Origin: Rhodosorus marinus CCMP1338
Taxonomy: Eukaryota; Plantae; Rhodophyta
Assembly: GCA_029953675.1 (NCBI GenBank)
Contig: JAMWBK010000013.1
Coordinates: 620,001 to 684,000 of the forward strand
DNA length: 64,000 nucleotides
Direction of reading: 5' to 3'
Part shown: in pieces, positions 2,268-47,249 of the stretch
Layout: every line of letters starts with the position of its first letter
Numbering within the stretch: the first letter of the stretch is position 1
Notes under the pieces: generated by a model
The model's database searches: none
The model's input: only the letters and a program-made list of their open reading frames with translations
Told to the model about the DNA's origin: nothing
Made by a program: the position numbers and the translations under genes

Positions 2268-2388
2268 GCCAGGTTGGTTGTTGGTTGGCTGGGTGAGGCG
2301 GGGACGGGGAGATCTGTTGGTGAGCAAGGTTGGAGCAAGGGAATATTGAATATACAAGTCTGAGATTAGTTTTGATTTGGATTGCAAG

Positions 2389-4183
2389 ATGACAGAAGTC
2401 GGGACTTTTGATGATCTTTTTGCTGGGGAGGATGCGCCCAAGCCTCCGTTCTTGGAGAGCCGGTCCTACATGATCCATGGAGAGATGATGCAGTGGCCTG
2501 GCGAGACGGAGACGGTGTATTCTCCAGTTATGAAGAAGCTTGCAGATGGGGGTGAGGCCGTTCCGATCGGAACTTTCGCCCTGGTGGATGAGAAGACTTC
2601 GCTCGAGGCTGCGGAGTGCTGCAGGAAGGCGTTCAACCAAGGGCGCGGAGAGTGGCCCTCCATGAAGGCAGAAGGGCGTATCCAGGCAGTTGAAAACTTC
2701 GTGAGCAGGATCAAGGAGAAGCGAGATGAGATCGTTGACCTTATCATGTGGGAGATCTGCAAATCCAAGCCAGATGCGCAGAAGGAGTTCGATCGTACTA
2801 TGCAGTATGTCCTGGACACCATTGTGGACTACAAGAATGAGCAGAACAAGGAGTCTTCGGTAGTCGCCGCTCCCGGCTATATGGCCAAGATTCGCCGTGT
2901 TCCGTTGGGAGTCGTTATGTGCTCGTCTCCCACAAATTACCCATACAATGAGCTCTACACCACGCTCATTCCCGCGCTCCTGACTGGAAATTGCGCGGTA
3001 GTGAAAGTGCCAAGGACCGGTGGATTGTGCCATCTCCCGACGTTTGAACTTTTCGCAGAGTGCTTCCCAGCGGGGACTGTTGCAATGCTGACCGGCAAGG
3101 GAAGGACCGTCATGCAGACAATTATGAAGTCTGGCATGGTGGATGCGTTCGCGTTCATCGGTTCCACAAAGGCTGCAATCGATTTGACCAAGGTCCACCC
3201 ACGTCCCAACCGTTTGAAGCTCTGCCTTGGGCTTGAGGCAAAGAACCCGGGTATCGTCTTCCCTGACGCTGATATCGATCTAGCCGTTGCCGAATGCACT
3301 ACGGGCTCAACCTCCTACAACGGCATGCGATGCACGGCCATTAAGATCATCTATCTTCATTCCTCTGTCAAGGATGAGTAAGTACACATCGGAAGCTTAA
3401 CTGCAATAGAAACATGGGCAAAGTGAACACTTTCTTGCTCGCGCGCTGATAACAGGTTTATGGAGAAGTTCTGCAAAAAGGTCGATAGTCTCAAGATGGG
3501 ATTGCCGTGGGAGTCTGGAGTCAAGATCACGCCGCTCGCTGAGAACGACAAGGCTACCTATCTCAATGGTCTAGTGACAGACGCCATTGAAAAGGGGGCG
3601 AAGATTGCGAATGAGCGAGGAGGGAAATACGACAGAACTCTGTACGCACCTACTATCCTGTTCCCCGTCAAGGATGGCATGAAAGTCTACGAGGAGGAAC
3701 AATTTGGTCCGGTTATCCCCGTCACCACGTTTGATGACATTGAGGAGGTGTGGGCCGACCTGCTGAAGAGCAACTATGGACAGCAAGCAGCTGGTGAGTA
3801 CTCCAAACTCTGCATGCTGTAGACCCTCGTCACGCAATCTCACGATCTAGGCACCGATCTGAAGGATGAACCCTATGCGACTCTTTTCCTTTACGACAGT
3901 CTTCAGCAGGAGCCCCGACACCATTGCCAAATCCATTGACGTTTTGACGCATGCGGTCGCTCGCGTTAATATCAATGGCCAGTGCCAGCGAGGACCGGAC
4001 GTCTTCCCGTTCACCGCAAGGAAGGATTCCGCGGCGGCAACGCTATCTGTTCACGACGCGCTTCGGACTTTTACCATCCGTGCCATGGTTGCCATTAAGC
4101 AAGATGACGCTGGAACCAAGCTCCTCAGAGATGTTGTGAAGGATGACACCTCCAAGTTCATGGCATATGACTACCTACCATAG
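2389..4183 (+). CDS. GAPN: NADP-dependent non-phosphorylating glyceraldehyde-3-phosphate dehydrogenase (ALDH11/GAPN-like), 3 exons
   Basis: Exons 2389-3377, 3456-3793 and 3900-4183 join in frame through GT-AG introns. ALDH motifs: P.NYP.N, K.PRTG, FIGS, LGLEAKNP, catalytic Cys in YNGMRCTA, EEQFGPVIP, RVNINGQCQRGPDVFPF..RKDS. Confidence 0.9.
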
Positions 4184-25866: not shown

Positions 25867-26450
25867 ATGGTTCGTTCTGGAGGAACGAGGTCGAATACTC
25901 GGGATATGTATTCCCGTCCGTATCGGGGACATGGAATGCCGAGCCTGAGTACCTACTTGACCAATTTCAAGATTGGGGATTATGTTGAGATTATTACCAA
26001 CTCGGCTGTTCAGCAGGGAATGCCGTTCAAGTTTTATCACGGCAAGACCGGCCGAATTTTCAACATCAGTAGGGGCGCTGTAGGCGTCGAGGTTAACAAA
26101 GTTGTGCGAGACAAGAAGCTCGCTAAGAGAATTCACGTGAGAATTGAGCATGTAAAGAAATCCCGCTGCACTGAGGAGCTCAAGAATCGAGTGCGGAGTA
26201 GGGACGCATTGAGGCGTGAAGCTCGTGAGAAGGGGGGTGAGTACAGAAGCGTACGGAAGATAACCGGTTTCGCTTGGTCACGCTTAGCGTGTTTCTAACG
26301 TAACGATTTGTTTTCTGTGTTATTTGCTGATTTGCAGAAAAACTTGTGTTGCCGAAGCGCCAGCCAGCGTCTATGACCAAGCCAGCAATCGTGGTTGCTG
26401 GTGATAATATTGAATTGTTGGAGCCTGTCAAGTATGAGTTCATTTGCTAA
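25867..26450 (+). CDS. RPL21: 60S ribosomal protein L21 (eL21), 2 exons
   Basis: R.NTRDMYSRPYR.HG..SLSTYL..FKIGDYV.I..NSAVQQGMPFKFYHGKTGRIFN...KRIHVRIEHVKKSRC. Intron 26237-26337; exon 2 ends LEPVKYEFIC*. Confidence 0.97.
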
Positions 26451-26467
26451 ATCTTAAGAGATAAACC

Positions 26468-27169
26468 AAGATTGCCCGAAATGCTTGGAATTCTGCAAGG
26501 TCATGGGAACGAATTTGCGATTCGGTACTAGAGAGTCGGAAACATCGTATCCCGTTGCTCCTAGATGCGCAAGACTCTGATGAGCAATCTACATCAAGCA
26601 ATTGTCCCGTAGCATAACAACTTGGGTGGTTTGCGTTCCCGTGGCGGGCTAGTATTTGACTGATTCCGAAAGCCACTTGCCATCCGCAGCTCCTCGATTG
26701 GAGAGGCCCCCCGCACAAGCTGGTGCAATCCGCCCTTTTCTACAATGAGCACAGAATAGAGAAGTCTGAGGTAGCGACAAGTCCAGGTCACAGATCATCC
26801 AAGACAGTATGCCTCCAGTGACAACCCAGGGATAGAGCATTCAAAGATTGCCCCAAAATGCTCGGAAATACTGCGAGGTCATTGGAACGAGTTTTACGAT
26901 TCGATACTAGAGAGTGGGAAACATCGTATCCATATTGCTCCGAGACAGTTGCGCGATACGCTGATGAGCAGTCTACATCAAGCAAATCGTCCCGCCCCGT
27001 AGCATAACAACTTGGGTGCTTGGGTTCCCGTGCCCGGTTAGTATTTGACTGATCCCGAAAGCCACTTGCCATCGGCAGCTCCTCGATTGGACTGGCCCGT
27101 CGCACAAGCTGGTATAATCCACCCTCCTCTGCGATGTGCACGGAAGAGAAAAATCTACTGAGGCAACGC
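26468..27169. repeat. Two diverged direct copies (about 310-325 bp; 26468-26777 and 26844-27169), possibly a decayed coding or TE relic
   Basis: Colinear shared blocks AAGATTGCCC..AAATGCT.GGAA, TACTAGAGAGT.GGAAACATCGTATC, GTAGCATAACAACTTGGGTG, TAGTATTTGACTGAT.CCGAAAGCCACTTGCCATC, GCACAAGCTGGT; roughly 80% identical by eye. Confidence 0.9.
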
Positions 27170-27548
27170 AGGAAGAGAGTACCTCTCCTCTTGCGCAGAT
27201 CTGTTTCAAGTACCTGAGAGGCACCACTACAGAGCCGCCAAATGTTACGTCTACGGGTCAAGGAGTCAATCGCAAGGTTACGAGATGGTCCTGAAGTAGT
27301 TTGCGCAGGTTTACCATACTACCAATGTTCACGGCATCATTTTAATGGACATTCAATAACATACTTGGTCCACGACGAGAAACCTATCTACAGGATTCAG
27401 ATCTCATTCACAAGCGAATCACAAAATGGGAGCTAGCATCCCAAGCTGGCAATATCTATAAAGCAAATTAACCAAACAACAAAAGGCAAGCAAAAACTTT
27501 CAACCGCTAGTTCTCAATCATAGCGGGCCTTGTGGCTCCACTGTCCGG

Positions 27549-28550
27549 CTACTTTCGATTCAGAGTTTCACGAATTAGATCTCCAGTAGATACATGCACC
27601 ATTCCAAAATCTCGTCGAAGCAACTCGGCTTGACTTCCCTTTCCACAGCCAGGTGGCCCACAAAGAACAACATTGTGCGGATGACCAGGAGACGTCTCGT
27701 TGTTCAGAGAGAGGTTGAGAATCGTAGATCTTATCTTCAAGTTCAGTTCAGCCCTGGTGACGCCCTCGCCAGCCTCGATCTCCACCACCGGAACATCGTG
27801 CTCACTGAAGCTAGTTAATATGCCAGGAATTTCCGAGCGGTAATTGGCAAGCCTCTCGCGTATCGTGTGTTCACTGTCATCATCTCGAACAGTCAACCTG
27901 TTCGCAACTTCCTCAGTAGGCGGCTTCTTGTACTTGAGATTGTATATGTTGCCCGTCTTCGGATCTATTCTCCTGTTCAAAAGGCGGTCCATGAGCTCTT
28001 CGTCGCCAACCTTCACGACAATCACAATTGACGGAAGGCTCTCGTTTTCCGCTAGGATGTCTACTTGGTGGTGTGTTCTCGGGAATCCATCCAGTAACCA
28101 ACCATGCCTAGAGCATTCCGTCCTAGAGAGCCGCTCCTTAAGAAGGCTTCCAATGACCGCATCGGGGATAAGATGGCCTTCTTTGAGGGTCTCCTTTATC
28201 TTTTCTCTGTCCCAAGATACGGGAGCCTGTACCTCAGCAGTCTGTACGTTCGACTTGTGGTCACTCTTGATAAAGGAGCTGAGGCCCTCATCAACGCTCA
28301 GACTTTGGCTGATAGGCGACCTAGAAACCTGACTCAACGCTGGACTTAGAGAAACGGGTGTCATGGCTCCAATACTCAGACCTGAGTCAAAGCTTCTGGA
28401 AACTTTGAGAGTCCCTTCGGTTCTCGACAACTCCGGAGTGGACTCGACGCTCCTTGGGATCCTCATCCAACCTCTAAACTCCGCCGGCAAAGGAGGCTTT
28501 TGCAACATACCCCCCACCTTCCCACTTGTTCTAGTAAGCGTAGACGCCAT
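27549..28550 (-). CDS. Adenylate kinase, apparently circularly permuted (333 aa, single ORF)
   Basis: After a 115-aa Ser-rich leader: G.LIPD, GWLLDGFPRT..Q, LID NRRIDPKTGNIYNLKY.PP, RDDDSE.TIRERL, C-terminal helix. Only then come VVLCGPPGCGKGSQAELL..FGMVHVSTGDLIRE and the stop at 27549-27551. Confidence 0.9.
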   Translation of the reverse strand: MASTLTRTSGKVGGMLQKPPLPAEFRGWMRIPRSVESTPELSRTEGTLKVSRSFDSGLSIGAMTPVSLSPALSQVSRSPISQSLSVDEGLSSFIKSDHKSNVQTAEVQAPVSWDREKIKETLKEGHLIPDAVIGSLLKERLSRTECSRHGWLLDGFPRTHHQVDILAENESLPSIVIVVKVGDEELMDRLLNRRIDPKTGNIYNLKYKKPPTEEVANRLTVRDDDSEHTIRERLANYRSEIPGILTSFSEHDVPVVEIEAGEGVTRAELNLKIRSTILNLSLNNETSPGHPHNVVLCGPPGCGKGSQAELLRRDFGMVHVSTGDLIRETLNRK

Positions 28551-31213
28551 GATATCACTATTCACACGCCAAATGACCTCAAACACAACCCAATCCCACG
28601 ACACGCGCAACGCATACACAACTTGATAAATACTCTCCTCCCCGAAAACCTAGCACACACACACCCAACCCTCCTCACCGCCTTCACCTATTACCACCTG
28701 TCAACACATTTAATACAAAGCACAACCTAAACAACCCCCTCAAACCCCTAAATACCAACACCCCCAAACACAATCCTCTATGCTTATCCCTTCCCCCTCG
28801 CCCTATGGACTACAAATACCCCTGCCACCAGCCCATACCCAATTCCCAATGTTTGCTATCGTTTGCCCTCTAATGAAAGAGCTTGCACTCCTATCGCCAT
28901 AGTGACTTACTCATTTACCTCACCCCCCCGGCGGGGGTGTAAAATAGCTGTAAAGCTAAACCAAAAACCCTAATAGCGGAAAAGACCTCAATCTCCACCT
29001 AAATTTTTCACTCCAATCAGTAAAAAAAAAAAGCATCAGCCATCCCATGAAACTGATTCTATCCCCCTGGATAATATCCACGAATATTCTGGAACTGTTT
29101 ACAAAATATAAACTATTAAACATAATCGATCTTTTTTTAAGATAGCCACCCCTGTTTAACTCTTTTTTGGAAAGCTGACGGGACGGCTTACTACTTTTGT
29201 GATGGGCGAGGGGGGGGGGTGCGCCACCGTGGCGGGTGGGAATTTGAGGAGAACAGAAAGCCCCTGTAAGAGATCAAAAGGAGCCTATGGTGTAATTTTT
29301 CTTCAGCCTCCCTCACCCTTTTTGGGCTCTCGTTAAAGAAACTAAGCTACCACTGAAAATTCGTATGGCGATTGGTTCTAATAGATATTCACTTTTGTTT
29401 GATTGGTTAAGAAGTACTGGACACTTTTTGGCAATGTCATTCCAGGCAAACTCACCAATGGACGGACTATGCCTTGAGAAATATAACTGAAAAGGCCTCC
29501 CTGACTTATGCAAATATTTAATATTCAGTCGATAGTTGTTCTCGTTTCTGAACCCCCTACTTATAGTCTCGCGACATATCGTTTTATTCATAAAATTTTA
29601 AATATTATCCGGGATTACTGTTTTGTTTCTGAGCATTCGAGGGGTATGCAAAATTGATGAGAGAAACTAATAATTATCAAGGCAAACAACAAGCGCTCCT
29701 GTGAACTGTTGCTAATTGAGGACAGCGAAAAAGATTGAAAGGTAAGATTTTTCCTTCACTCCCATACTCGAAAACCGGAATGATAACGACTGATACGATA
29801 TATGATGATTGAAAATCTTCGTGCTCCTTTTTTTTTATGCTGAAAGCAAGAGATCGAATCTCCATCGTTTCGCCTACGTCGAATTTGATTTGAGCTTCTC
29901 CAATTTTCAGAAGGTTTTTCAAGCAAATGACGAAAAAAATTTGCGCGCCTCGATTAGGATCTATACTCAAATAAAAATATAGCACGTGTCTCAACGTTAC
30001 CTTTTTTTTTTTTTTTTTGTATTTGCTCGTCCTGGTTTTGGCCTACCTTCAACCCCTGCAACTTCTAATAGAAAACTTGGAATCTGGAGCTTCACCAAAA
30101 CAACTGTTGGTTTCAGCGCCTTACGGATGGTTACTTCCATTACCCAGAAAATCTCACTTGCCTGCCCACCCCCCAAAACAAAAAGCTCTCCATACAACAA
30201 GTTCAGGATTTTCCGGAATTACTCATTTTCCTTGACTTGTTAAGAGCGAGCTTTCGTGCTGGGCGATGTTTGTTTTCTAATAAATAGGAAAATGTAGGTG
30301 GGTCACCTTTGGAGGCCATCGAAAATCGCATTCGAGGCTGTTTTCGTGATAGAATTATTGAATAAACGCTATGTATCAACCCATATATTTCATGAATAGG
30401 ATAATAAATGATATTCAAACCCGGTATTTCTGCCGTATAACCGGTTAGACTTGATTGAACTTGGTGTCAGCAGCGATTGGGATTATTCCTCCTTTTTTCT
30501 TTTTGGTAGATCCATGCGGTTGGCATAGCACCTTCCAGCCATCGAGCTACGCTCTGGCGGATGGGCAGCTCCTTTTTTTTTTTTTGACCACAGCTAAGAG
30601 CACTTGCATGCTAGCCCGACGGGAGTTGGAAGAAAACGGAACCAGAAGTGTGAGAGTTACTGGTACGGGTCATGACCGGGCAGCGAGTCCTGATCCTCCT
30701 TATGTTGGACAAGACACACGTGAGTTTGACGACGTCTAGAAGATGAGCCTGATAGTTTTTCTAGATCCTTTCAGGTCGAACGGGGATAAGGGTACCAGCT
30801 TGACGTTTTGGCTGCGATATCAGGGCCTCCTCTAGTGACCTCGTTTGCACAATGAAAAGAGCCTCCTTGTACGTCAAACATAAGCAGGGAAACCGTGGTC
30901 ATTGAAAAAACTCGTATGTTGTCTTGGAGCGTGGTTTACCAGAAGCAAACGACGCAACTAGCTACTTGAAATACTCCTTAAGGTTCAGTTCCTCCTTAGC
31001 TCCCTCGCCTTCTTCGTGAACGACTTCACCGTCCACTAGTTGCTCAAAACCATCAGTATATCATACACAACCAACCAAGCTCACCACATCTCAGTGATTC
31101 TTGAAAGCGTTCGTGGAGCTGCCAGCAGGTATTCAATGCTGTCCTCGAATTTACTCCTACCCACTAAGCAGCTTCATCTTGTACTCGAAAGCCATCAACC
31201 CCTCCTTGGAAGT

Positions 31214-45263: not shown

Positions 45264-47249
45264 ATGGAAAAGCTACCGAAGGGATTATCAATTATAAGTC
45301 AGCAGTCTCGGTTTCACGTGACTGACCACGCGGCGAATGCGACCACAGACATTGATATAAAAGACATCAACGCGAGTTTCGGGACGAAGGAGATCTTCGA
45401 GGATGCGAATCTGAAGCTGTTTCATGGTGTTCGGTATGGACTTATCGGTCGGAATGGTGTTGGTAAATCGCTCCTGCTGAAGAGTATTGCGTACAGATGG
45501 CTTCCTGGTGTTCCAGCAGCCACGAGCATCTTCTATGTGGATCAGCTGGAACGTGAGGAGCAGGAGAACAGCAAAATATTGGACCTAGTCCTTAGTCAGA
45601 ATCAAGAAGCGTGGAGGAACTGGCGGCAGATCGAATTGCTGAGTACAGCTTTGGAAACTGATGATGAAGAAACCATGCGTGAGGCACTGCACAAACTCCG
45701 ACTAGATGATTGCGAGCGAGAATTGGAGGAGCTGAAGATGGTAGAAGCAAGAACCAGCGGCGCGAGAGGACTTGATGCTCGAAAATCTGTCCTTAGGAAG
45801 AGCAAGGATTTGCGAACAATGAACGAGACAGGAGCCGACAAGCAAGAGTCGGTTCAAGTCTCAATCCAGCAACGGCTGCAGGAGTTATATGACAGCTCGG
45901 AGGACCGGACTGCACTGACAACGAAAGCTGAGCAGGCGTTATTCTCTCTTGGGTTCTCAGAAGAACACTTGGCGCTCCCTTTGAGGCAACTGTCTGGCGG
46001 CTGGCGTATACGAGTCGCACTCGCGATGGCGAAGTATATCGAACCGCAGGTCCTTCTGCTAGACGAGCCTACTAACCACTTGGACATATCTGGTATCATT
46101 TGGCTAAAGAAGTACTTCTCCAAACTGGATGGCGTGACGATGGTGATCATATCACACGATCGTGCGTTCCTTAACGAGACCGTCGATGAACTCATAATCA
46201 TTCAGAACAAAAGCTTCCTCACACATCCTGGCAACTACGACTCGTACGTGCAGAATACGGAGGAGCAGATGCTTCACCGGCAGAGGCAGAGAGATGCGCT
46301 GCAGAAGAAACGAGATCACGTCGAAGACAGTATTCGGAATGGTTTGAGCCAAGGAAAGAAGAAGGGCGACGACAAAAAACTACAACAAGTCGCCTCTAGA
46401 AGGAAGAAGCTCAACGAACGCTGGGGATTGGAGAGAAACGAGGCTGGTCACAGGCTCAAGATCAACCGTGACCTTCCAGGTTATCACTACACTAGTCGTG
46501 AGGACGTCCAAGAGGAATATATCGACCCACCTATTCAGTGGAAGCTTCCACAGCCCGTCACGCTTCGTTCGCCTGGGCCTATCTTCCAGGTTGATGACGT
46601 TTGGTTCAGGTACGATACCCCCGTGGCGACGAAGCCGCGGTGGATTCTGCGGGGAGTTAACATGCAAGTGCAGCAAGGCGATCGGATTGCACTAATCGGG
46701 CCCAACGGGCAGGGAAAATCGACGATGATGGGGATCCTTGCTGGATCATTGAAGCCAATGAAGGGGCAAGTGAGGATGCACCCTCACGTCACCGTATCCT
46801 ACTTTGAACAGCATTTTGTGGACAATACGAGAGCGCTGTCTGTTTCCATGTCGGAGTACATTCATGATAAGTACCCGACCATGAGTCAGCAGGATATTTA
46901 CTCGGCTCTGGGGTCTTTCAACCTAGCTGGAGCTGTTCATCAGCCGCTTTCGTCCTTGTCTGGAGGTCAGTCAGTTCGTTTTGCGTTCGCTCTGATGGCG
47001 CTTGACAGGCCTCACGCGTTGCTTCTCGACGAGCCGACCAACCACCTGGACCTCGATGCGTCGGAAGCTCTTCGTGAATGTCTCATGGAATTTGAAGGAG
47101 CAGTCATCTTCATCTCTCATGACATCTACTTCATCGGGTCCACAGAATGCAAGCACGTGTACCTCGTGAACAAGACAAAGATCGAAGATATTGAATCTGT
47201 GGATAGCTATAAGCCTCCGTCTGAGAGCCTCAAGCTGAGCTGGGAGTGA
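45264..47249 (+). CDS. ABC-F family ATPase (two NBDs, no membrane domain), intronless, 661 aa
   Basis: GRNGVGKS / LSGGW / LLLDEPTNHLD / IISHDR and GPNGQGKS / LSGGQ / LLLDEPTNHLD / ISHD, with a charged inter-NBD linker. Confidence 0.95.
   Translation: MEKLPKGLSIISQQSRFHVTDHAANATTDIDIKDINASFGTKEIFEDANLKLFHGVRYGLIGRNGVGKSLLLKSIAYRWLPGVPAATSIFYVDQLEREEQENSKILDLVLSQNQEAWRNWRQIELLSTALETDDEETMREALHKLRLDDCERELEELKMVEARTSGARGLDARKSVLRKSKDLRTMNETGADKQESVQVSIQQRLQELYDSSEDRTALTTKAEQALFSLGFSEEHLALPLRQLSGGWRIRVALAMAKYIEPQVLLLDEPTNHLDISGIIWLKKYFSKLDGVTMVIISHDRAFLNETVDELIIIQNKSFLTHPGNYDSYVQNTEEQMLHRQRQRDALQKKRDHVEDSIRNGLSQGKKKGDDKKLQQVASRRKKLNERWGLERNEAGHRLKINRDLPGYHYTSREDVQEEYIDPPIQWKLPQPVTLRSPGPIFQVDDVWFRYDTPVATKPRWILRGVNMQVQQGDRIALIGPNGQGKSTMMGILAGSLKPMKGQVRMHPHVTVSYFEQHFVDNTRALSVSMSEYIHDKYPTMSQQDIYSALGSFNLAGAVHQPLSSLSGGQSVRFAFALMALDRPHALLLDEPTNHLDLDASEALRECLMEFEGAVIFISHDIYFIGSTECKHVYLVNKTKIEDIESVDSYKPPSESLKLSWE

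What the first reader, a model, noticed from the sequence alone, without database searches (positions are those of the whole stretch)
27549..28550. Naturally circularly permuted adenylate kinase: P-loop at the C-terminus, catalytic residues intact
Seen: one uninterrupted ORF. Residues 116-280 match ADK from the middle of the NMP-binding domain onward (EKIKETLKEGHLIPD, GWLLDGFPRT, plastid-type short LID RRIDPKTGNIY, RDDD..TIRERL, terminal helix). A linker of about 11 aa then leads to the normal ADK N-terminus (residues 292-333: VVLCGPPGCGKGSQ...HVSTGDLIRE) and a stop. Known: canonical ADK order is P-loop, NMP-binding, core, LID. Equivalents of E. coli K13, T31, R36, R88, Q92, R123, R156, D158/D159 and R167 are all present by eye. 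The two halves are complementary, with only about 5 residues of the NMP-binding domain missing at the break. No second P-loop lies upstream and no second DGFPR downstream. Inference: tandem ADK duplication followed by loss of the outer ends, kept by selection. The new termini fall in the mobile NMP-binding domain, which could alter substrate specificity or dynamics. The 115-aa Ser-rich leader may be regulatory. A possible intron (27456-27552, weak GTAGCC donor) would add YCQLGMLAPIL, resembling the missing SELGKQA.
Basis: partly seen in the sequence, partly recalled or inferred. Interest (0 to 1): 0.88.

Follow-up and report, generated by a model that had tools for sequence, protein, structure and literature searches.

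The report
Natural circularly permuted adenylate kinase
A red-alga gene encodes an adenylate kinase whose two halves sit in swapped order, with the ATP-binding P-loop at the tail; the rearrangement is transcribed, under purifying selection, shared by red algae from Galdieria to Rhodosorus, and breaks the chain where engineers had already shown it can be broken.

Summary
On the minus strand, 28550..27549 is one intronless ORF of 333 aa. Residues 112-283 match adenylate kinase (ADK) from the second helix of the AMP-binding domain to the C-terminal helix. A 9-aa linker follows. Residues 293-333 are the normal ADK N-terminus, then a stop. Rejoining the halves in canonical order gives one continuous Pfam ADK match (1-149/151). 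All catalytic residues are present and invariant in 11 permuted relatives. A transcript contig of a sister strain is colinear with the genome through both UTRs, so the proposed intron does not exist. No other ADK piece lies in the 64 kb. dN/dS is 0.15 in every part. AlphaFold predicts one compact domain (pTM 0.83). The same order occurs in 31 proteins. Named ones come from Rhodosorus (two paralogues), Purpureofilum, Compsopogon and three Galdieria species, and they form one clade. The break (E. coli positions 42/44) matches the engineered, active "cp45" kinases. I found no paper describing a natural permuted ADK. The best reading is a functional, ancient red-algal permuted adenylate kinase. 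Its disordered leader, carrying a repeated S-Φ-[DE]-x-G-L motif, is attached to the AMP lid. Activity, localisation and the leader's role are untested.

The parts
27549..28550 (-). Complete single-exon CDS of the permuted adenylate kinase: 333 codons plus the TAG stop at 27549-27551.
   Evidence: ORF list and sequence. Colinear with a sister-strain transcript contig. The window's own database entry P0495 covers the same frame and stop but starts at M29.
28218..28550 (-). N-terminal leader, residues 1-111. It is Ser-rich (19% Ser) and predicted disordered.
   Evidence: pLDDT is below 50 for residues 1-111. No Pfam match. dN/dS is 0.16. The N-terminus MAS(T/L)xR(T/S)xGK is conserved among orthologues.
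28377..28394 (-). Leader motif copy 1, SFDSGL (residues 53-58; context LKVSRSFDSGLSIG).
   Evidence: The motif S-[FLVMIY]-[DE]-x-[GSDE]-[LM] occurs 2-3 times in 15 of 15 long-leader family members, against 0.01-0.05 expected in shuffled leaders.
28281..28298 (-). Leader motif copy 2, SVDEGL (residues 85-90; context ISQSLSVDEGLSSF).
   Evidence: aligned column block.
27702..28217 (-). ADK 'C-half', residues 112-283. It holds the second part of the AMP-binding domain (helix from about residue 115, G125-H-L-I-P-D130), the core strand WLLDGFPR158 with Q162, the LID, and the long C-terminal helix 266-283.
   Evidence: Pfam ADK profile positions 43-149. 1ZAK chain 48-189. E. coli residues 47-189. 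pLDDT is about 90.
27876..27974 (-). LID segment R193-D225 (RRIDPKTGNIYNLKYKKPPTEEVANRLTVRDDD). It has no zinc cysteines and resembles the maize chloroplast ADK.
   Evidence: Alignment to 1ZAK. R193, R194, R222, D224 and D225 are invariant.
27675..27701 (-). Linker, residues 284-292 (about 9 aa). It joins the old C-terminal helix to the old N-terminal strand.
   Evidence: Loop between H266-283 and E293-297 in the model, with a pLDDT dip to about 70. Length and sequence vary among relatives.
27552..27674 (-). ADK 'N-part' at the C-terminus, residues 293-333: strand 1, P-loop, helix 1, strand 2 and the first AMP-domain helix HVSTGDLIR327, then 6 more residues.
   Evidence: 1ZAK chain 5-43. E. 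coli residues 3-36. AAA_17 profile 2-36. pLDDT 85-92 with strands assigned.
27633..27659 (-). P-loop GPPGCGKGS, residues 298-306 (K304 = E. coli K13).
   Evidence: Read directly from the sequence. G298, P299, G301, C302, G303, K304 and G305 are invariant.
27312..27548 (-). 3' untranslated region.
   Evidence: The sister-strain transcript contig L002 continues colinearly past the stop down to 27312, with no splice.
28551..28642 (-). 5' untranslated region.
   Evidence: Colinear with L002 up to 28642. The reading frame upstream of the ATG is not conserved between strains.

Best explanation
This is a genuine, expressed, single-exon gene of a red alga (Rhodosorus marinus or a very close relative). 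It encodes a circularly permuted adenylate kinase. After a disordered 111-aa leader, the chain starts in the middle of the AMP-binding domain, at about E. coli position 44. It runs through the core, the LID and the C-terminal helix. A linker of about 9 aa then leads into strand 1, the P-loop and the first AMP-domain helix, and the chain ends about 6 residues after the R36 equivalent. Folded, it should rebuild one ordinary adenylate kinase domain in which the AMP lid is assembled from the two chain ends. It should catalyse ATP + AMP <-> 2 ADP with the standard residues. The permutation is old: it is shared by Cyanidiophyceae, Compsopogonophyceae and Stylonematophyceae, and by a short-leader group on red-alga-like contigs. 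It most likely arose once, by fusion of two tandem ADK copies and loss of the outer parts. One consequence is that the N-terminal leader hangs on the mobile AMP lid rather than on the rigid core. The leader, with its repeated S-Φ-[DE]-x-G-L motif, probably regulates or localises the enzyme. Gene structure, order, conservation, selection and predicted fold are shown. Activity, the origin route and the leader's function are inferred.
For: - **Swapped order and complementarity:**
- **No other ADK piece in 64 kb:**
- **Transcript support:** contig L002 is colinear with 28642..27312 at 90.4% identity, across the start, the stop and both UTRs. R. marinus MMETSP transcripts marked 'type:complete' have the same termini.
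- **Purifying selection:** dN/dS is 0.148 overall; leader 0.164, C-half 0.141, linker plus P-loop 0.135.
- **Catalytic residues:** invariant in 11 and in 18 permuted sequences.
- **Predicted fold:** for residues 108-333 alone, AlphaFold2 gives pLDDT 88.4 and pTM 0.83, with both C-terminal strands assigned. All top Foldseek PDB hits are adenylate kinases, best 1ZAK.
- **Family:** 31 proteins have the C-half then N-part architecture and nothing else. Named sources are Rhodosorus, Purpureofilum, Compsopogon, and Galdieria sulphuraria, phlegrea and yellowstonensis.
- **Single clade:** all 31 de-permuted units form one clade in a neighbour-joining tree of 304 ADK units.
- **Engineering precedent:** permutants starting at residue 45 of Bacillus and Geobacillus AK keep activity and Ap5A binding. 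The AMP-binding domain is the region most tolerant to new termini (bioRxiv 10.1101/2023.10.25.564053 and 10.1101/840603).
Against: - No enzymatic, structural or localisation data exist for any member.
- The tools return no coordinates. That the P-loop segment sits in its canonical place is therefore inferred only from pTM, pLDDT and strand assignment.
- Foldseek aligns sequentially and so covers only about 170-180 columns.
- Bootstrap support for a single clade is moderate (53/100). The de-permuted constructs share artificial junctions, which could pull them together.
- The transcripts are from sister strains (93-96% protein identity), not from the sequenced individual.
- Engineered cp45 enzymes are less stable and bind Ap5A 4-5 times more weakly, so reduced or altered function cannot be excluded.
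Confidence: 0.8

Rival explanations
1. It is a gene-model artefact. The ORF would be the middle exon of a larger two-domain (tandem) adenylate kinase gene, with its first P-loop exon and last C-half exon elsewhere, or it would result from misassembly.
For: Tandem 2xADK proteins are common and align without interruption across the junction: AK8 9FQR_G8 residues 129-326 and P0005 residues 189-411. 49 of the first 263 proteins collected are two-domain ADKs.
Against: - A sister-strain transcript is colinear through the stop codon and 237 nt of 3' UTR, and through the start.
- Independent transcriptome ORFs marked 'complete' from Rhodosorus, Compsopogon and another MMETSP red alga begin and end at the same places.
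- No ADK fragment occurs elsewhere in the 64 kb, even at E = 0.1.
- Genomic copies in the R. marinus paralogue, in Galdieria, and on the 16-kb and 178-kb contigs of unnamed short-leader members show the same limits.
- The upstream frame is not conserved between strains.
Confidence: 0.03
2. The fold is a permuted adenylate kinase, but the protein is not a plain AMP kinase. With the AMP lid split between the chain ends, it may have changed monophosphate specificity. It may instead act mainly as a nucleotide-sensing or scaffolding protein with weak turnover.
For: The termini lie in the domain that selects the monophosphate. E. coli K57 is replaced by H126 here, and that position varies in the family. 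Engineered cp45 enzymes lose affinity and maximal activity. The long conserved leader and the 62-66-aa tails in Galdieria suggest partners.
Against: Every residue known to contact AMP, ATP and the transferred phosphate is conserved, and nearly all are invariant over a very deep divergence. These are T31, R36, L58/V59, G85, R88, Q92, K13, R119, R123, R156, D158/159 and R167. This pattern is that of an active kinase. dN/dS is as low in the P-loop part as elsewhere.
Confidence: 0.12
3. The active unit is a domain-swapped dimer or oligomer. The C-terminal helix of one chain would pair with the N-terminal AMP-domain helix of another, so the AMP lid forms between subunits.
For: Both lid pieces are at free chain ends, a geometry that favours swapping. 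The engineered permutants show multi-phase unfolding and floppy ends.
Against: The monomer model is confident as a whole (pTM 0.83). The engineered cp45 enzymes work without any evidence of obligate dimerisation. Nothing in the sequences points to an interface.
Confidence: 0.05

Closest known systems
Canonical 'long' adenylate kinases, closest solved structure maize chloroplast ADK (PDB 1ZAK); Pfam PF00406
   Same: The same fold is predicted. P-loop, TGDLLR, GxLxPD, DGFPRT..Q, the LID arginines and the DD pair are the same. The cysteine-free LID has the same length. Sequence identity is 34% over the aligned part.
   Different: The segment order is swapped: canonical positions 44-214 come first and 1-42 come last. 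A linker of about 9 aa joins the old termini. The AMP-binding domain is no longer one continuous insert. A 111-aa disordered leader is attached to the AMP lid.
Engineered circular permutants of Bacillus subtilis and Geobacillus stearothermophilus adenylate kinase that start at residue 45 ('cp45'), with the permutation-profiling maps of three AKs (bioRxiv 10.1101/2023.10.25.564053; 10.1101/840603; PMC6061844)
   Same: The break point is the same to within 1-3 residues. Window residue 114 aligns with B. subtilis residue 45, and the chain ends at about position 42. Both have old termini joined by a short linker and a split AMP-binding domain. The laboratory versions are active.
   Different: The red-algal proteins are natural, ancient and under selection. 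Their linker is about 9 aa rather than 3. They carry conserved extra sequence at the new N-terminus, and in Galdieria at the new C-terminus too. In text searches of these two preprints the word 'natural' does not occur.
Tandem multi-ADK-domain proteins (mammalian AK8, PDB 9FQR chain G8; protist proteins P0005-P0007)
   Same: The C-half, linker and next P-loop stretch aligns colinearly with the window protein. This is what the duplication-fusion-truncation route predicts.
   Different: Those proteins keep a P-loop before the first C-half and a C-half after the second P-loop. The window protein and its 30 relatives have neither.
Circularly permuted GTPases (RsgA/YjeQ, YlqF/RbgA, YqeH families); from general knowledge, not tested here
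   Same: They are natural, family-wide circular permutations of a P-loop NTPase fold that keep catalysis.
   Different: They belong to a different superfamily branch (GTPases), with a different break point that reorders the G motifs, and they are long recognised. No such case has been described for nucleoside monophosphate kinases as far as my searches show.

Membership tests
Adenylate kinase (Pfam PF00406, NMP-kinase fold) | Score above the curated Pfam threshold | tested here: met
   110.1 bits against a cutoff of 26.8 in native order. 122.8 bits as one stretch when the halves are rejoined.
Adenylate kinase (Pfam PF00406, NMP-kinase fold) | P-loop GxxGxGK(G)(S/T) with the catalytic lysine | tested here: met
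   GPPGCGKGS, residues 298-306; K304 = E. coli K13.
Adenylate kinase (Pfam PF00406, NMP-kinase fold) | AMP-site residues T31, R36, L58/V59, G85, R88, Q92 | tested here: met
   T322, R327, L127/I128, G155, R158, Q162. R327, L127, G155, R158 and Q162 are invariant in the 11-sequence alignment; T322 is I or M in two members and I128 varies. The residues lie on both chain ends.
Adenylate kinase (Pfam PF00406, NMP-kinase fold) | LID and core arginines R119, R123, R156, R167 and the D158/D159 pair | tested here: met
   R189, R193, R222, R233, D224/D225; invariant.
Adenylate kinase (Pfam PF00406, NMP-kinase fold) | Canonical segment order: P-loop, AMP-binding domain, core, LID, C-terminal helix | tested here: not met
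   The order is 44-214 then 1-42. This is the finding itself. By fold and chemistry it belongs to the family, as a permuted variant.
Adenylate kinase (Pfam PF00406, NMP-kinase fold) | One compact three-layer alpha/beta domain | tested here: met
   Prediction only. pTM is 0.83 and pLDDT 88.4 for residues 108-333. All best PDB matches are ADKs. Placement of the P-loop strand could not be inspected directly.
Adenylate kinase (Pfam PF00406, NMP-kinase fold) | ATP:AMP phosphotransferase activity | not testable with these tools
   Needs recombinant protein.
Tandem two-domain adenylate kinases (AK8-like) | Two complete ADK domains in one chain | tested here: not met
   Exactly one C-half and one N-part in the protein. 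None elsewhere in the window. Transcripts end at the same stop.
Circular permutants made by duplication, fusion and truncation | Existence of tandem intermediates and colinearity with their middle part | tested here: inconclusive
   Colinear alignments with tandem ADKs exist. The tree does not place the permuted clade next to a specific tandem family.
Red-algal permuted ADK family (defined here) | C-half then N-part order, with the chain ending shortly after the R36-equivalent helix and no further ADK homology | tested here: met
   The window protein and 30 others. Tails of 6-66 aa lack ADK similarity.
Red-algal permuted ADK family (defined here) | Long Ser-rich leader with 2-3 S-Φ-[DE]-x-G-L motifs (long-leader subgroup) | tested here: met
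   SFDSGL at residues 53-58 and SVDEGL at 85-90. Present in 15 of 15 subgroup members and 0 of 11 short-leader members.

The most novel reading that the evidence does not exclude
This would be the first natural circular permutation recognised in the nucleoside monophosphate kinase family, fixed more than a billion years ago in the red-algal stem. The permutation would be adaptive because it moves the chain's N-terminus onto the mobile AMP lid. A disordered, phosphorylatable leader (repeated R/K-x-x-S-Φ-[DE]-x-G-L motifs) could then gate AMP-lid closure directly. This would turn a housekeeping equilibrium enzyme into a signal-controlled one.
Probability: 0.15. Interest if true: 0.85.

Novelty: new variant of a known kind. 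Interest (0 to 1): 0.66.

Why it matters
Adenylate kinase is the textbook model for how domain motions, local unfolding and chain connectivity control catalysis. Laboratory permutation scans predicted that the AMP-binding domain is the place where the chain can be cut, and cp45 enzymes were built to study this.

A natural family with the same cut, maintained under purifying selection across the deepest splits of the red algae, offers three things:
- an evolutionary validation of those maps;
- naturally optimised permuted sequences to compare with the destabilised engineered ones;
- a clean example of permutation by duplication in a P-loop kinase.

It also flags a red-alga-specific isoenzyme of energy metabolism, with a conserved disordered leader attached to the substrate lid, whose regulation and compartment are unknown. 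Public databases currently label these proteins simply 'adenylate kinase', 'lid domain-containing protein' or 'hypothetical protein'. Domain-order-blind annotation hides the rearrangement.

Tried and rejected
- **Hidden exons.** tblastn of the ORF and an unfiltered profile search of all six frames of the 64 kb, using separate models of the two halves, found nothing. Rejected.
The sister-strain transcript runs straight through it, and orthologues end at the same residue. Rejected.
- **Pfam on the leader alone.** No family.
- **Rfam and tRNA scans of the window for context.** Nothing.
- **Identifying the short-leader group by run accession.** A search of papers found no hit. Their contigs' other called genes have no Pfam hits. 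Only a neighbour gene on the 178-kb contig gave a taxonomic hint.
- **P-loop cysteine as a special feature.** It is Cys in 28 of 31 permuted proteins. It is also Cys in 17 of the 68 single-domain and 8 of the 33 tandem ADK units that could be scored. Not distinctive.
- **Sister group of the permuted clade.** The neighbour-joining tree puts it next to a large mixed set of canonical ADKs, which is not informative about the ancestor.
- **Tandem-repeat search in the intergenic region 26200-27500.** No array, only a two-copy repeat.
- **Structure search for another protein with this order.** All PDB hits are canonical ADKs aligned over the C-half only.
Full report
**1. What is in the sequence**

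The feature lies on the minus strand. An ORF runs from the ATG at 28550 to a TAG at 27549-27551 and encodes 333 aa. The mechanical ORF extends to a GTG at 28619.

Pfam ADK scores 110 bits against a cutoff of 26.8, in two stretches. The main stretch covers profile positions 43-149 of 151. The last 35 residues match the first 36 positions of the P-loop model AAA_17.

Against the maize chloroplast enzyme 1ZAK, residues 291-329 align to chain residues 5-43, and residues 112-253 align to chain residues 48-189. I cut the protein and rejoined it as 290-333 followed by 111-289. Pfam then gives a single uninterrupted ADK match over profile positions 1-149 at 122.8 bits. The two halves are therefore exactly complementary.

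| E. coli | Window protein |
|---|---|
| K13 | K304 |
| T31 | T322 |
| R36 | R327 |
| L58/V59 | L127/I128 |
| G85 | G155 |
| R88 | R158 |
| Q92 | Q162 |
| R119 | R189 |
| R123 | R193 |
| R156 | R222 |
| D158/D159 | D224/D225 |
| R167 | R233 |

The chain ends at about E. coli position 42, and ADK homology starts at about position 44-47. At most 1-3 residues are missing, not five.

**2. Is it a complete gene?**

A 1421-nt contig (L002) comes from a JGI/IMG sample, 3300016967. Its 90% protein cluster also holds R. marinus MMETSP transcripts. L002 aligns colinearly with window 28642..27312 at 90.4% identity. The alignment spans the 5' UTR, the start codon, the whole ORF, the stop and 237 nt of 3' UTR, with no splice gap.

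The 90% cluster of that protein holds two Rhodosorus marinus MMETSP ORFs: P0496 (333 aa) and P0497, marked 'type:complete'. Both have the same start (MAST[LI]TR) and the same end (...RETLNRK). The cluster also holds a 305-aa entry from NCBI and UniRef whose names are withheld. That entry is the window's own annotated protein. It uses the same frame and stop but starts at Met29.

The frame upstream of the ATG is not conserved between strains. tblastn with the ORF found no other ADK fragment in the 64 kb. An unfiltered profile search of all six frames, with separate models of each half, also found none; the next-best E was 0.26.

The neighbouring genes are ordinary eukaryotic nuclear genes: RPL21e at 25867-26298, an ABCF ATPase at 45264-47249, and an aldehyde dehydrogenase exon at 2377-3381. 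Misassembly and hidden exons are thus effectively excluded.

**3. Selection and fold**

Nei-Gojobori dN/dS between the window and L002:

| Region | dN/dS |
|---|---|
| Whole gene (24 non-synonymous, 44 synonymous differences) | 0.148 |
| Leader | 0.164 |
| C-half | 0.141 |
| Linker plus P-loop part | 0.135 |

AlphaFold2 on the full protein with 11 family sequences gives pLDDT of about 90 for residues 112-333 and below 50 for residues 1-111. On residues 108-333 alone, with 18 family sequences, it gives mean pLDDT 88.4 and pTM 0.83. The secondary-structure order is that of ADK, and the C-terminal segment is assigned as strand (293-297), helix (304-315), strand (318-321), helix (322-331).

All top Foldseek hits in the PDB are adenylate kinases, best 1ZAK. 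The alignments cover about 170-180 columns, as expected for a sequential aligner faced with a permutation. No solved structure has this order.

I could not inspect coordinates. That strand 293-297 sits in the middle of the sheet is therefore inferred, not seen.

**4. The family**

The first homology search returned proteins that cover 98-100% of the query in the same order. They come from a sister strain (93% identity), Purpureofilum apyrenoidigerum, an MMETSP transcriptome and a Logan assembly. A second Rhodosorus marinus gene, NDN08_008356, covers 77% of the query in the same order at 40% identity.

I built separate profiles of the two halves and classified every protein collected. In the first 263 proteins, 106 had the canonical order and 49 were two-domain ADKs. 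In the final unit set, 181 were canonical, 46 were two-domain, and 31 had only 'C-half then N-part'.

Named members:
- Compsopogon caeruleus (MMETSP0312, 'type:complete');
- Galdieria sulphuraria (annotated 'adenylate kinase');
- Galdieria phlegrea;
- Galdieria yellowstonensis.

In all members, ADK homology stops right after the R36-equivalent helix. The tails of 6-66 aa have no ADK similarity.

A second subgroup of 11 proteins has short, Ala/Ser/Thr/Arg-rich N-termini that look like organelle presequences. It lies on unnamed eukaryotic contigs, one of 178 kb. On that contig, a neighbouring AP-1 gamma gene has as its best named relatives the florideophytes Gracilaria domingensis (46%) and Agarophyton chilense (44%), well ahead of plants at about 33%. 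This group is probably red-algal too, but its class is unknown.

In a neighbour-joining tree of 304 domain units put into canonical order (208 columns), all 31 permuted units form one clade. Galdieria is basal, and the short-leader group is sister to the Stylonematophyceae and Compsopogon set. Bootstrap support is 53 of 100.

It is general knowledge that Cyanidiophyceae are the deepest red-algal branch. The permutation therefore most likely dates to the red-algal stem.

**5. Origin**

Tandem ADK proteins align straight through the junction:
- bovine AK8 (9FQR_G8), residues 129-326;
- protist P0005, residues 189-411, 35% identity over 226 aa.

This is what the standard route predicts: duplication, in-frame fusion, then loss of the first P-loop part and the last C-half. 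However, the tree does not attach the permuted clade to any particular tandem family. The route is likely but not demonstrated.

**6. Relation to engineered permutants**

Two preprints from one group report two relevant results. [quoted passage not shown] Second, purified 'cp45' versions of Bacillus subtilis and Geobacillus stearothermophilus AK keep activity. They bind Ap5A 4-5 times more weakly and are less stable and more protease-sensitive (10.1101/2023.10.25.564053).

B. subtilis residue 50 aligns with window residue 119. Residue 45 therefore corresponds to window residue 114, where the ordered part begins. Nature and the laboratory chose the same cut.

In text searches of those two preprints the word 'natural' does not occur. 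Three full-text searches for a natural permuted adenylate or NMP kinase found nothing. The library is incomplete, so this is absence of evidence only.

**7. The leader**

Residues 1-111 are 19% Ser and predicted disordered. They are nonetheless as constrained as the enzyme (dN/dS 0.16).

All 15 long-leader members examined carry 2-3 copies of S-[FLVMIY]-[DE]-x-[GSDE]-[LM], against 0.01-0.05 expected in shuffled leaders. None of the 11 short-leader proteins has it. In the window the copies are SFDSGL (residues 53-58) and SVDEGL (residues 85-90). Contexts include:
- LKVSRSFDSGL (window);
- FPRSSSLDEGL and FTRSHSFEEGL (Galdieria);
- RRKSVSFDEGL (Compsopogon).

The first copy usually has a basic residue at -3 or -4 and a hydrophobic residue at -5 and +1 relative to the serine. 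This resembles a basophilic protein-kinase site. That reading is my speculation.

Because of the permutation, the leader is attached to the mobile AMP lid rather than to the rigid core. It could influence lid closure. It may alternatively, or also, serve for targeting. None of this was testable here.

**8. Verdict**

The protein works like, and by fold and chemistry is, an adenylate kinase, but it fails the family's canonical-order criterion. It is best filed as a new, natural, permuted variant that defines a red-algal family.

What is shown: gene structure, order, complementarity, conservation, selection and predicted fold. What is inferred: catalysis, monomeric state, origin by tandem fusion, and any role of the leader.

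Noticed in passing
window 28467-28550 (minus strand), residues 1-28: The public annotation of this gene (P0495, 305 aa) starts at Met29. The ATG at 28550 gives an N-terminus MAS(T/L)xR(T/S)xGKVGGML that is conserved in Rhodosorus strains, Purpureofilum and other red algae. The annotated start is therefore probably 28 codons too short.
   Followed up: partly
L001 4001-5130 (Rhodosorus marinus GCA_029953675.1, JAMWBK010000002.1): Rhodosorus has a second, 40%-identical permuted paralogue (NDN08_008356, P0008). It has one intron of about 74 nt after residue 272, just before the C-terminal helix. The 33-aa insert in P0009 at the same spot looks like that intron read through in frame by a gene caller.
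   Followed up: partly
window 26631-26767 and 27020-27156: A two-copy direct repeat (137 nt, 84% identical, 389 nt apart). It lies in the convergent intergenic region between the 3' ends of RPL21e and the kinase gene. No tandem array and no Rfam hit. Nature unknown.
   Followed up: partly
window 28281-28298 and 28377-28394; leaders of P0002-P0004, P0008, P0009, P0166, P0177, P0223, P0271, P0278, P0279, P0371: A short linear motif, S-Φ-[DE]-x-G-L, often preceded by R/K-x-x or R-S-x. It is repeated 2-3 times in an otherwise disordered leader and conserved from Galdieria to Rhodosorus. It matches no Pfam family and I know of no described motif like it.
   Followed up: partly
L003, L004, L005, L006 (Logan SRR23274492, SRR23272329, SRR23272324, SRR23272297); L007/L008 (ENA ERZ6863533, ERR9287620): The short-leader permuted kinases come from a block of neighbouring SRA runs and an ENA assembly of unidentified eukaryotes. 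They are intron-poor and several are GC/Ala-rich. The only taxonomic hint is 44-46% identity of a neighbouring AP-1 gamma gene to florideophyte red algae.
   Followed up: partly
P0223, P0271, P0278, P0279, P0371 (Galdieria species): The Galdieria members carry a conserved extension of 62-66 aa after the kinase (…DLRSVGI(V/L)FGR…). It has no ADK similarity and is absent from the other lineages.
   Followed up: no
window 28600-28950: The region upstream of the kinase gene is strongly C/A-rich on the plus strand, with CA repeats and runs of C. It may be promoter or 5' UTR composition. Not analysed.
   Followed up: no
window 45264-47249 (+), 2377-3381 (+), 25867-26298 (+): Other recognisable genes in the window: an ABCF-type double ABC ATPase (661 aa, single ORF), an exon of an aldehyde dehydrogenase, and ribosomal protein L21e. 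Six other ORFs of 232-436 aa have no Pfam match.
   Followed up: partly
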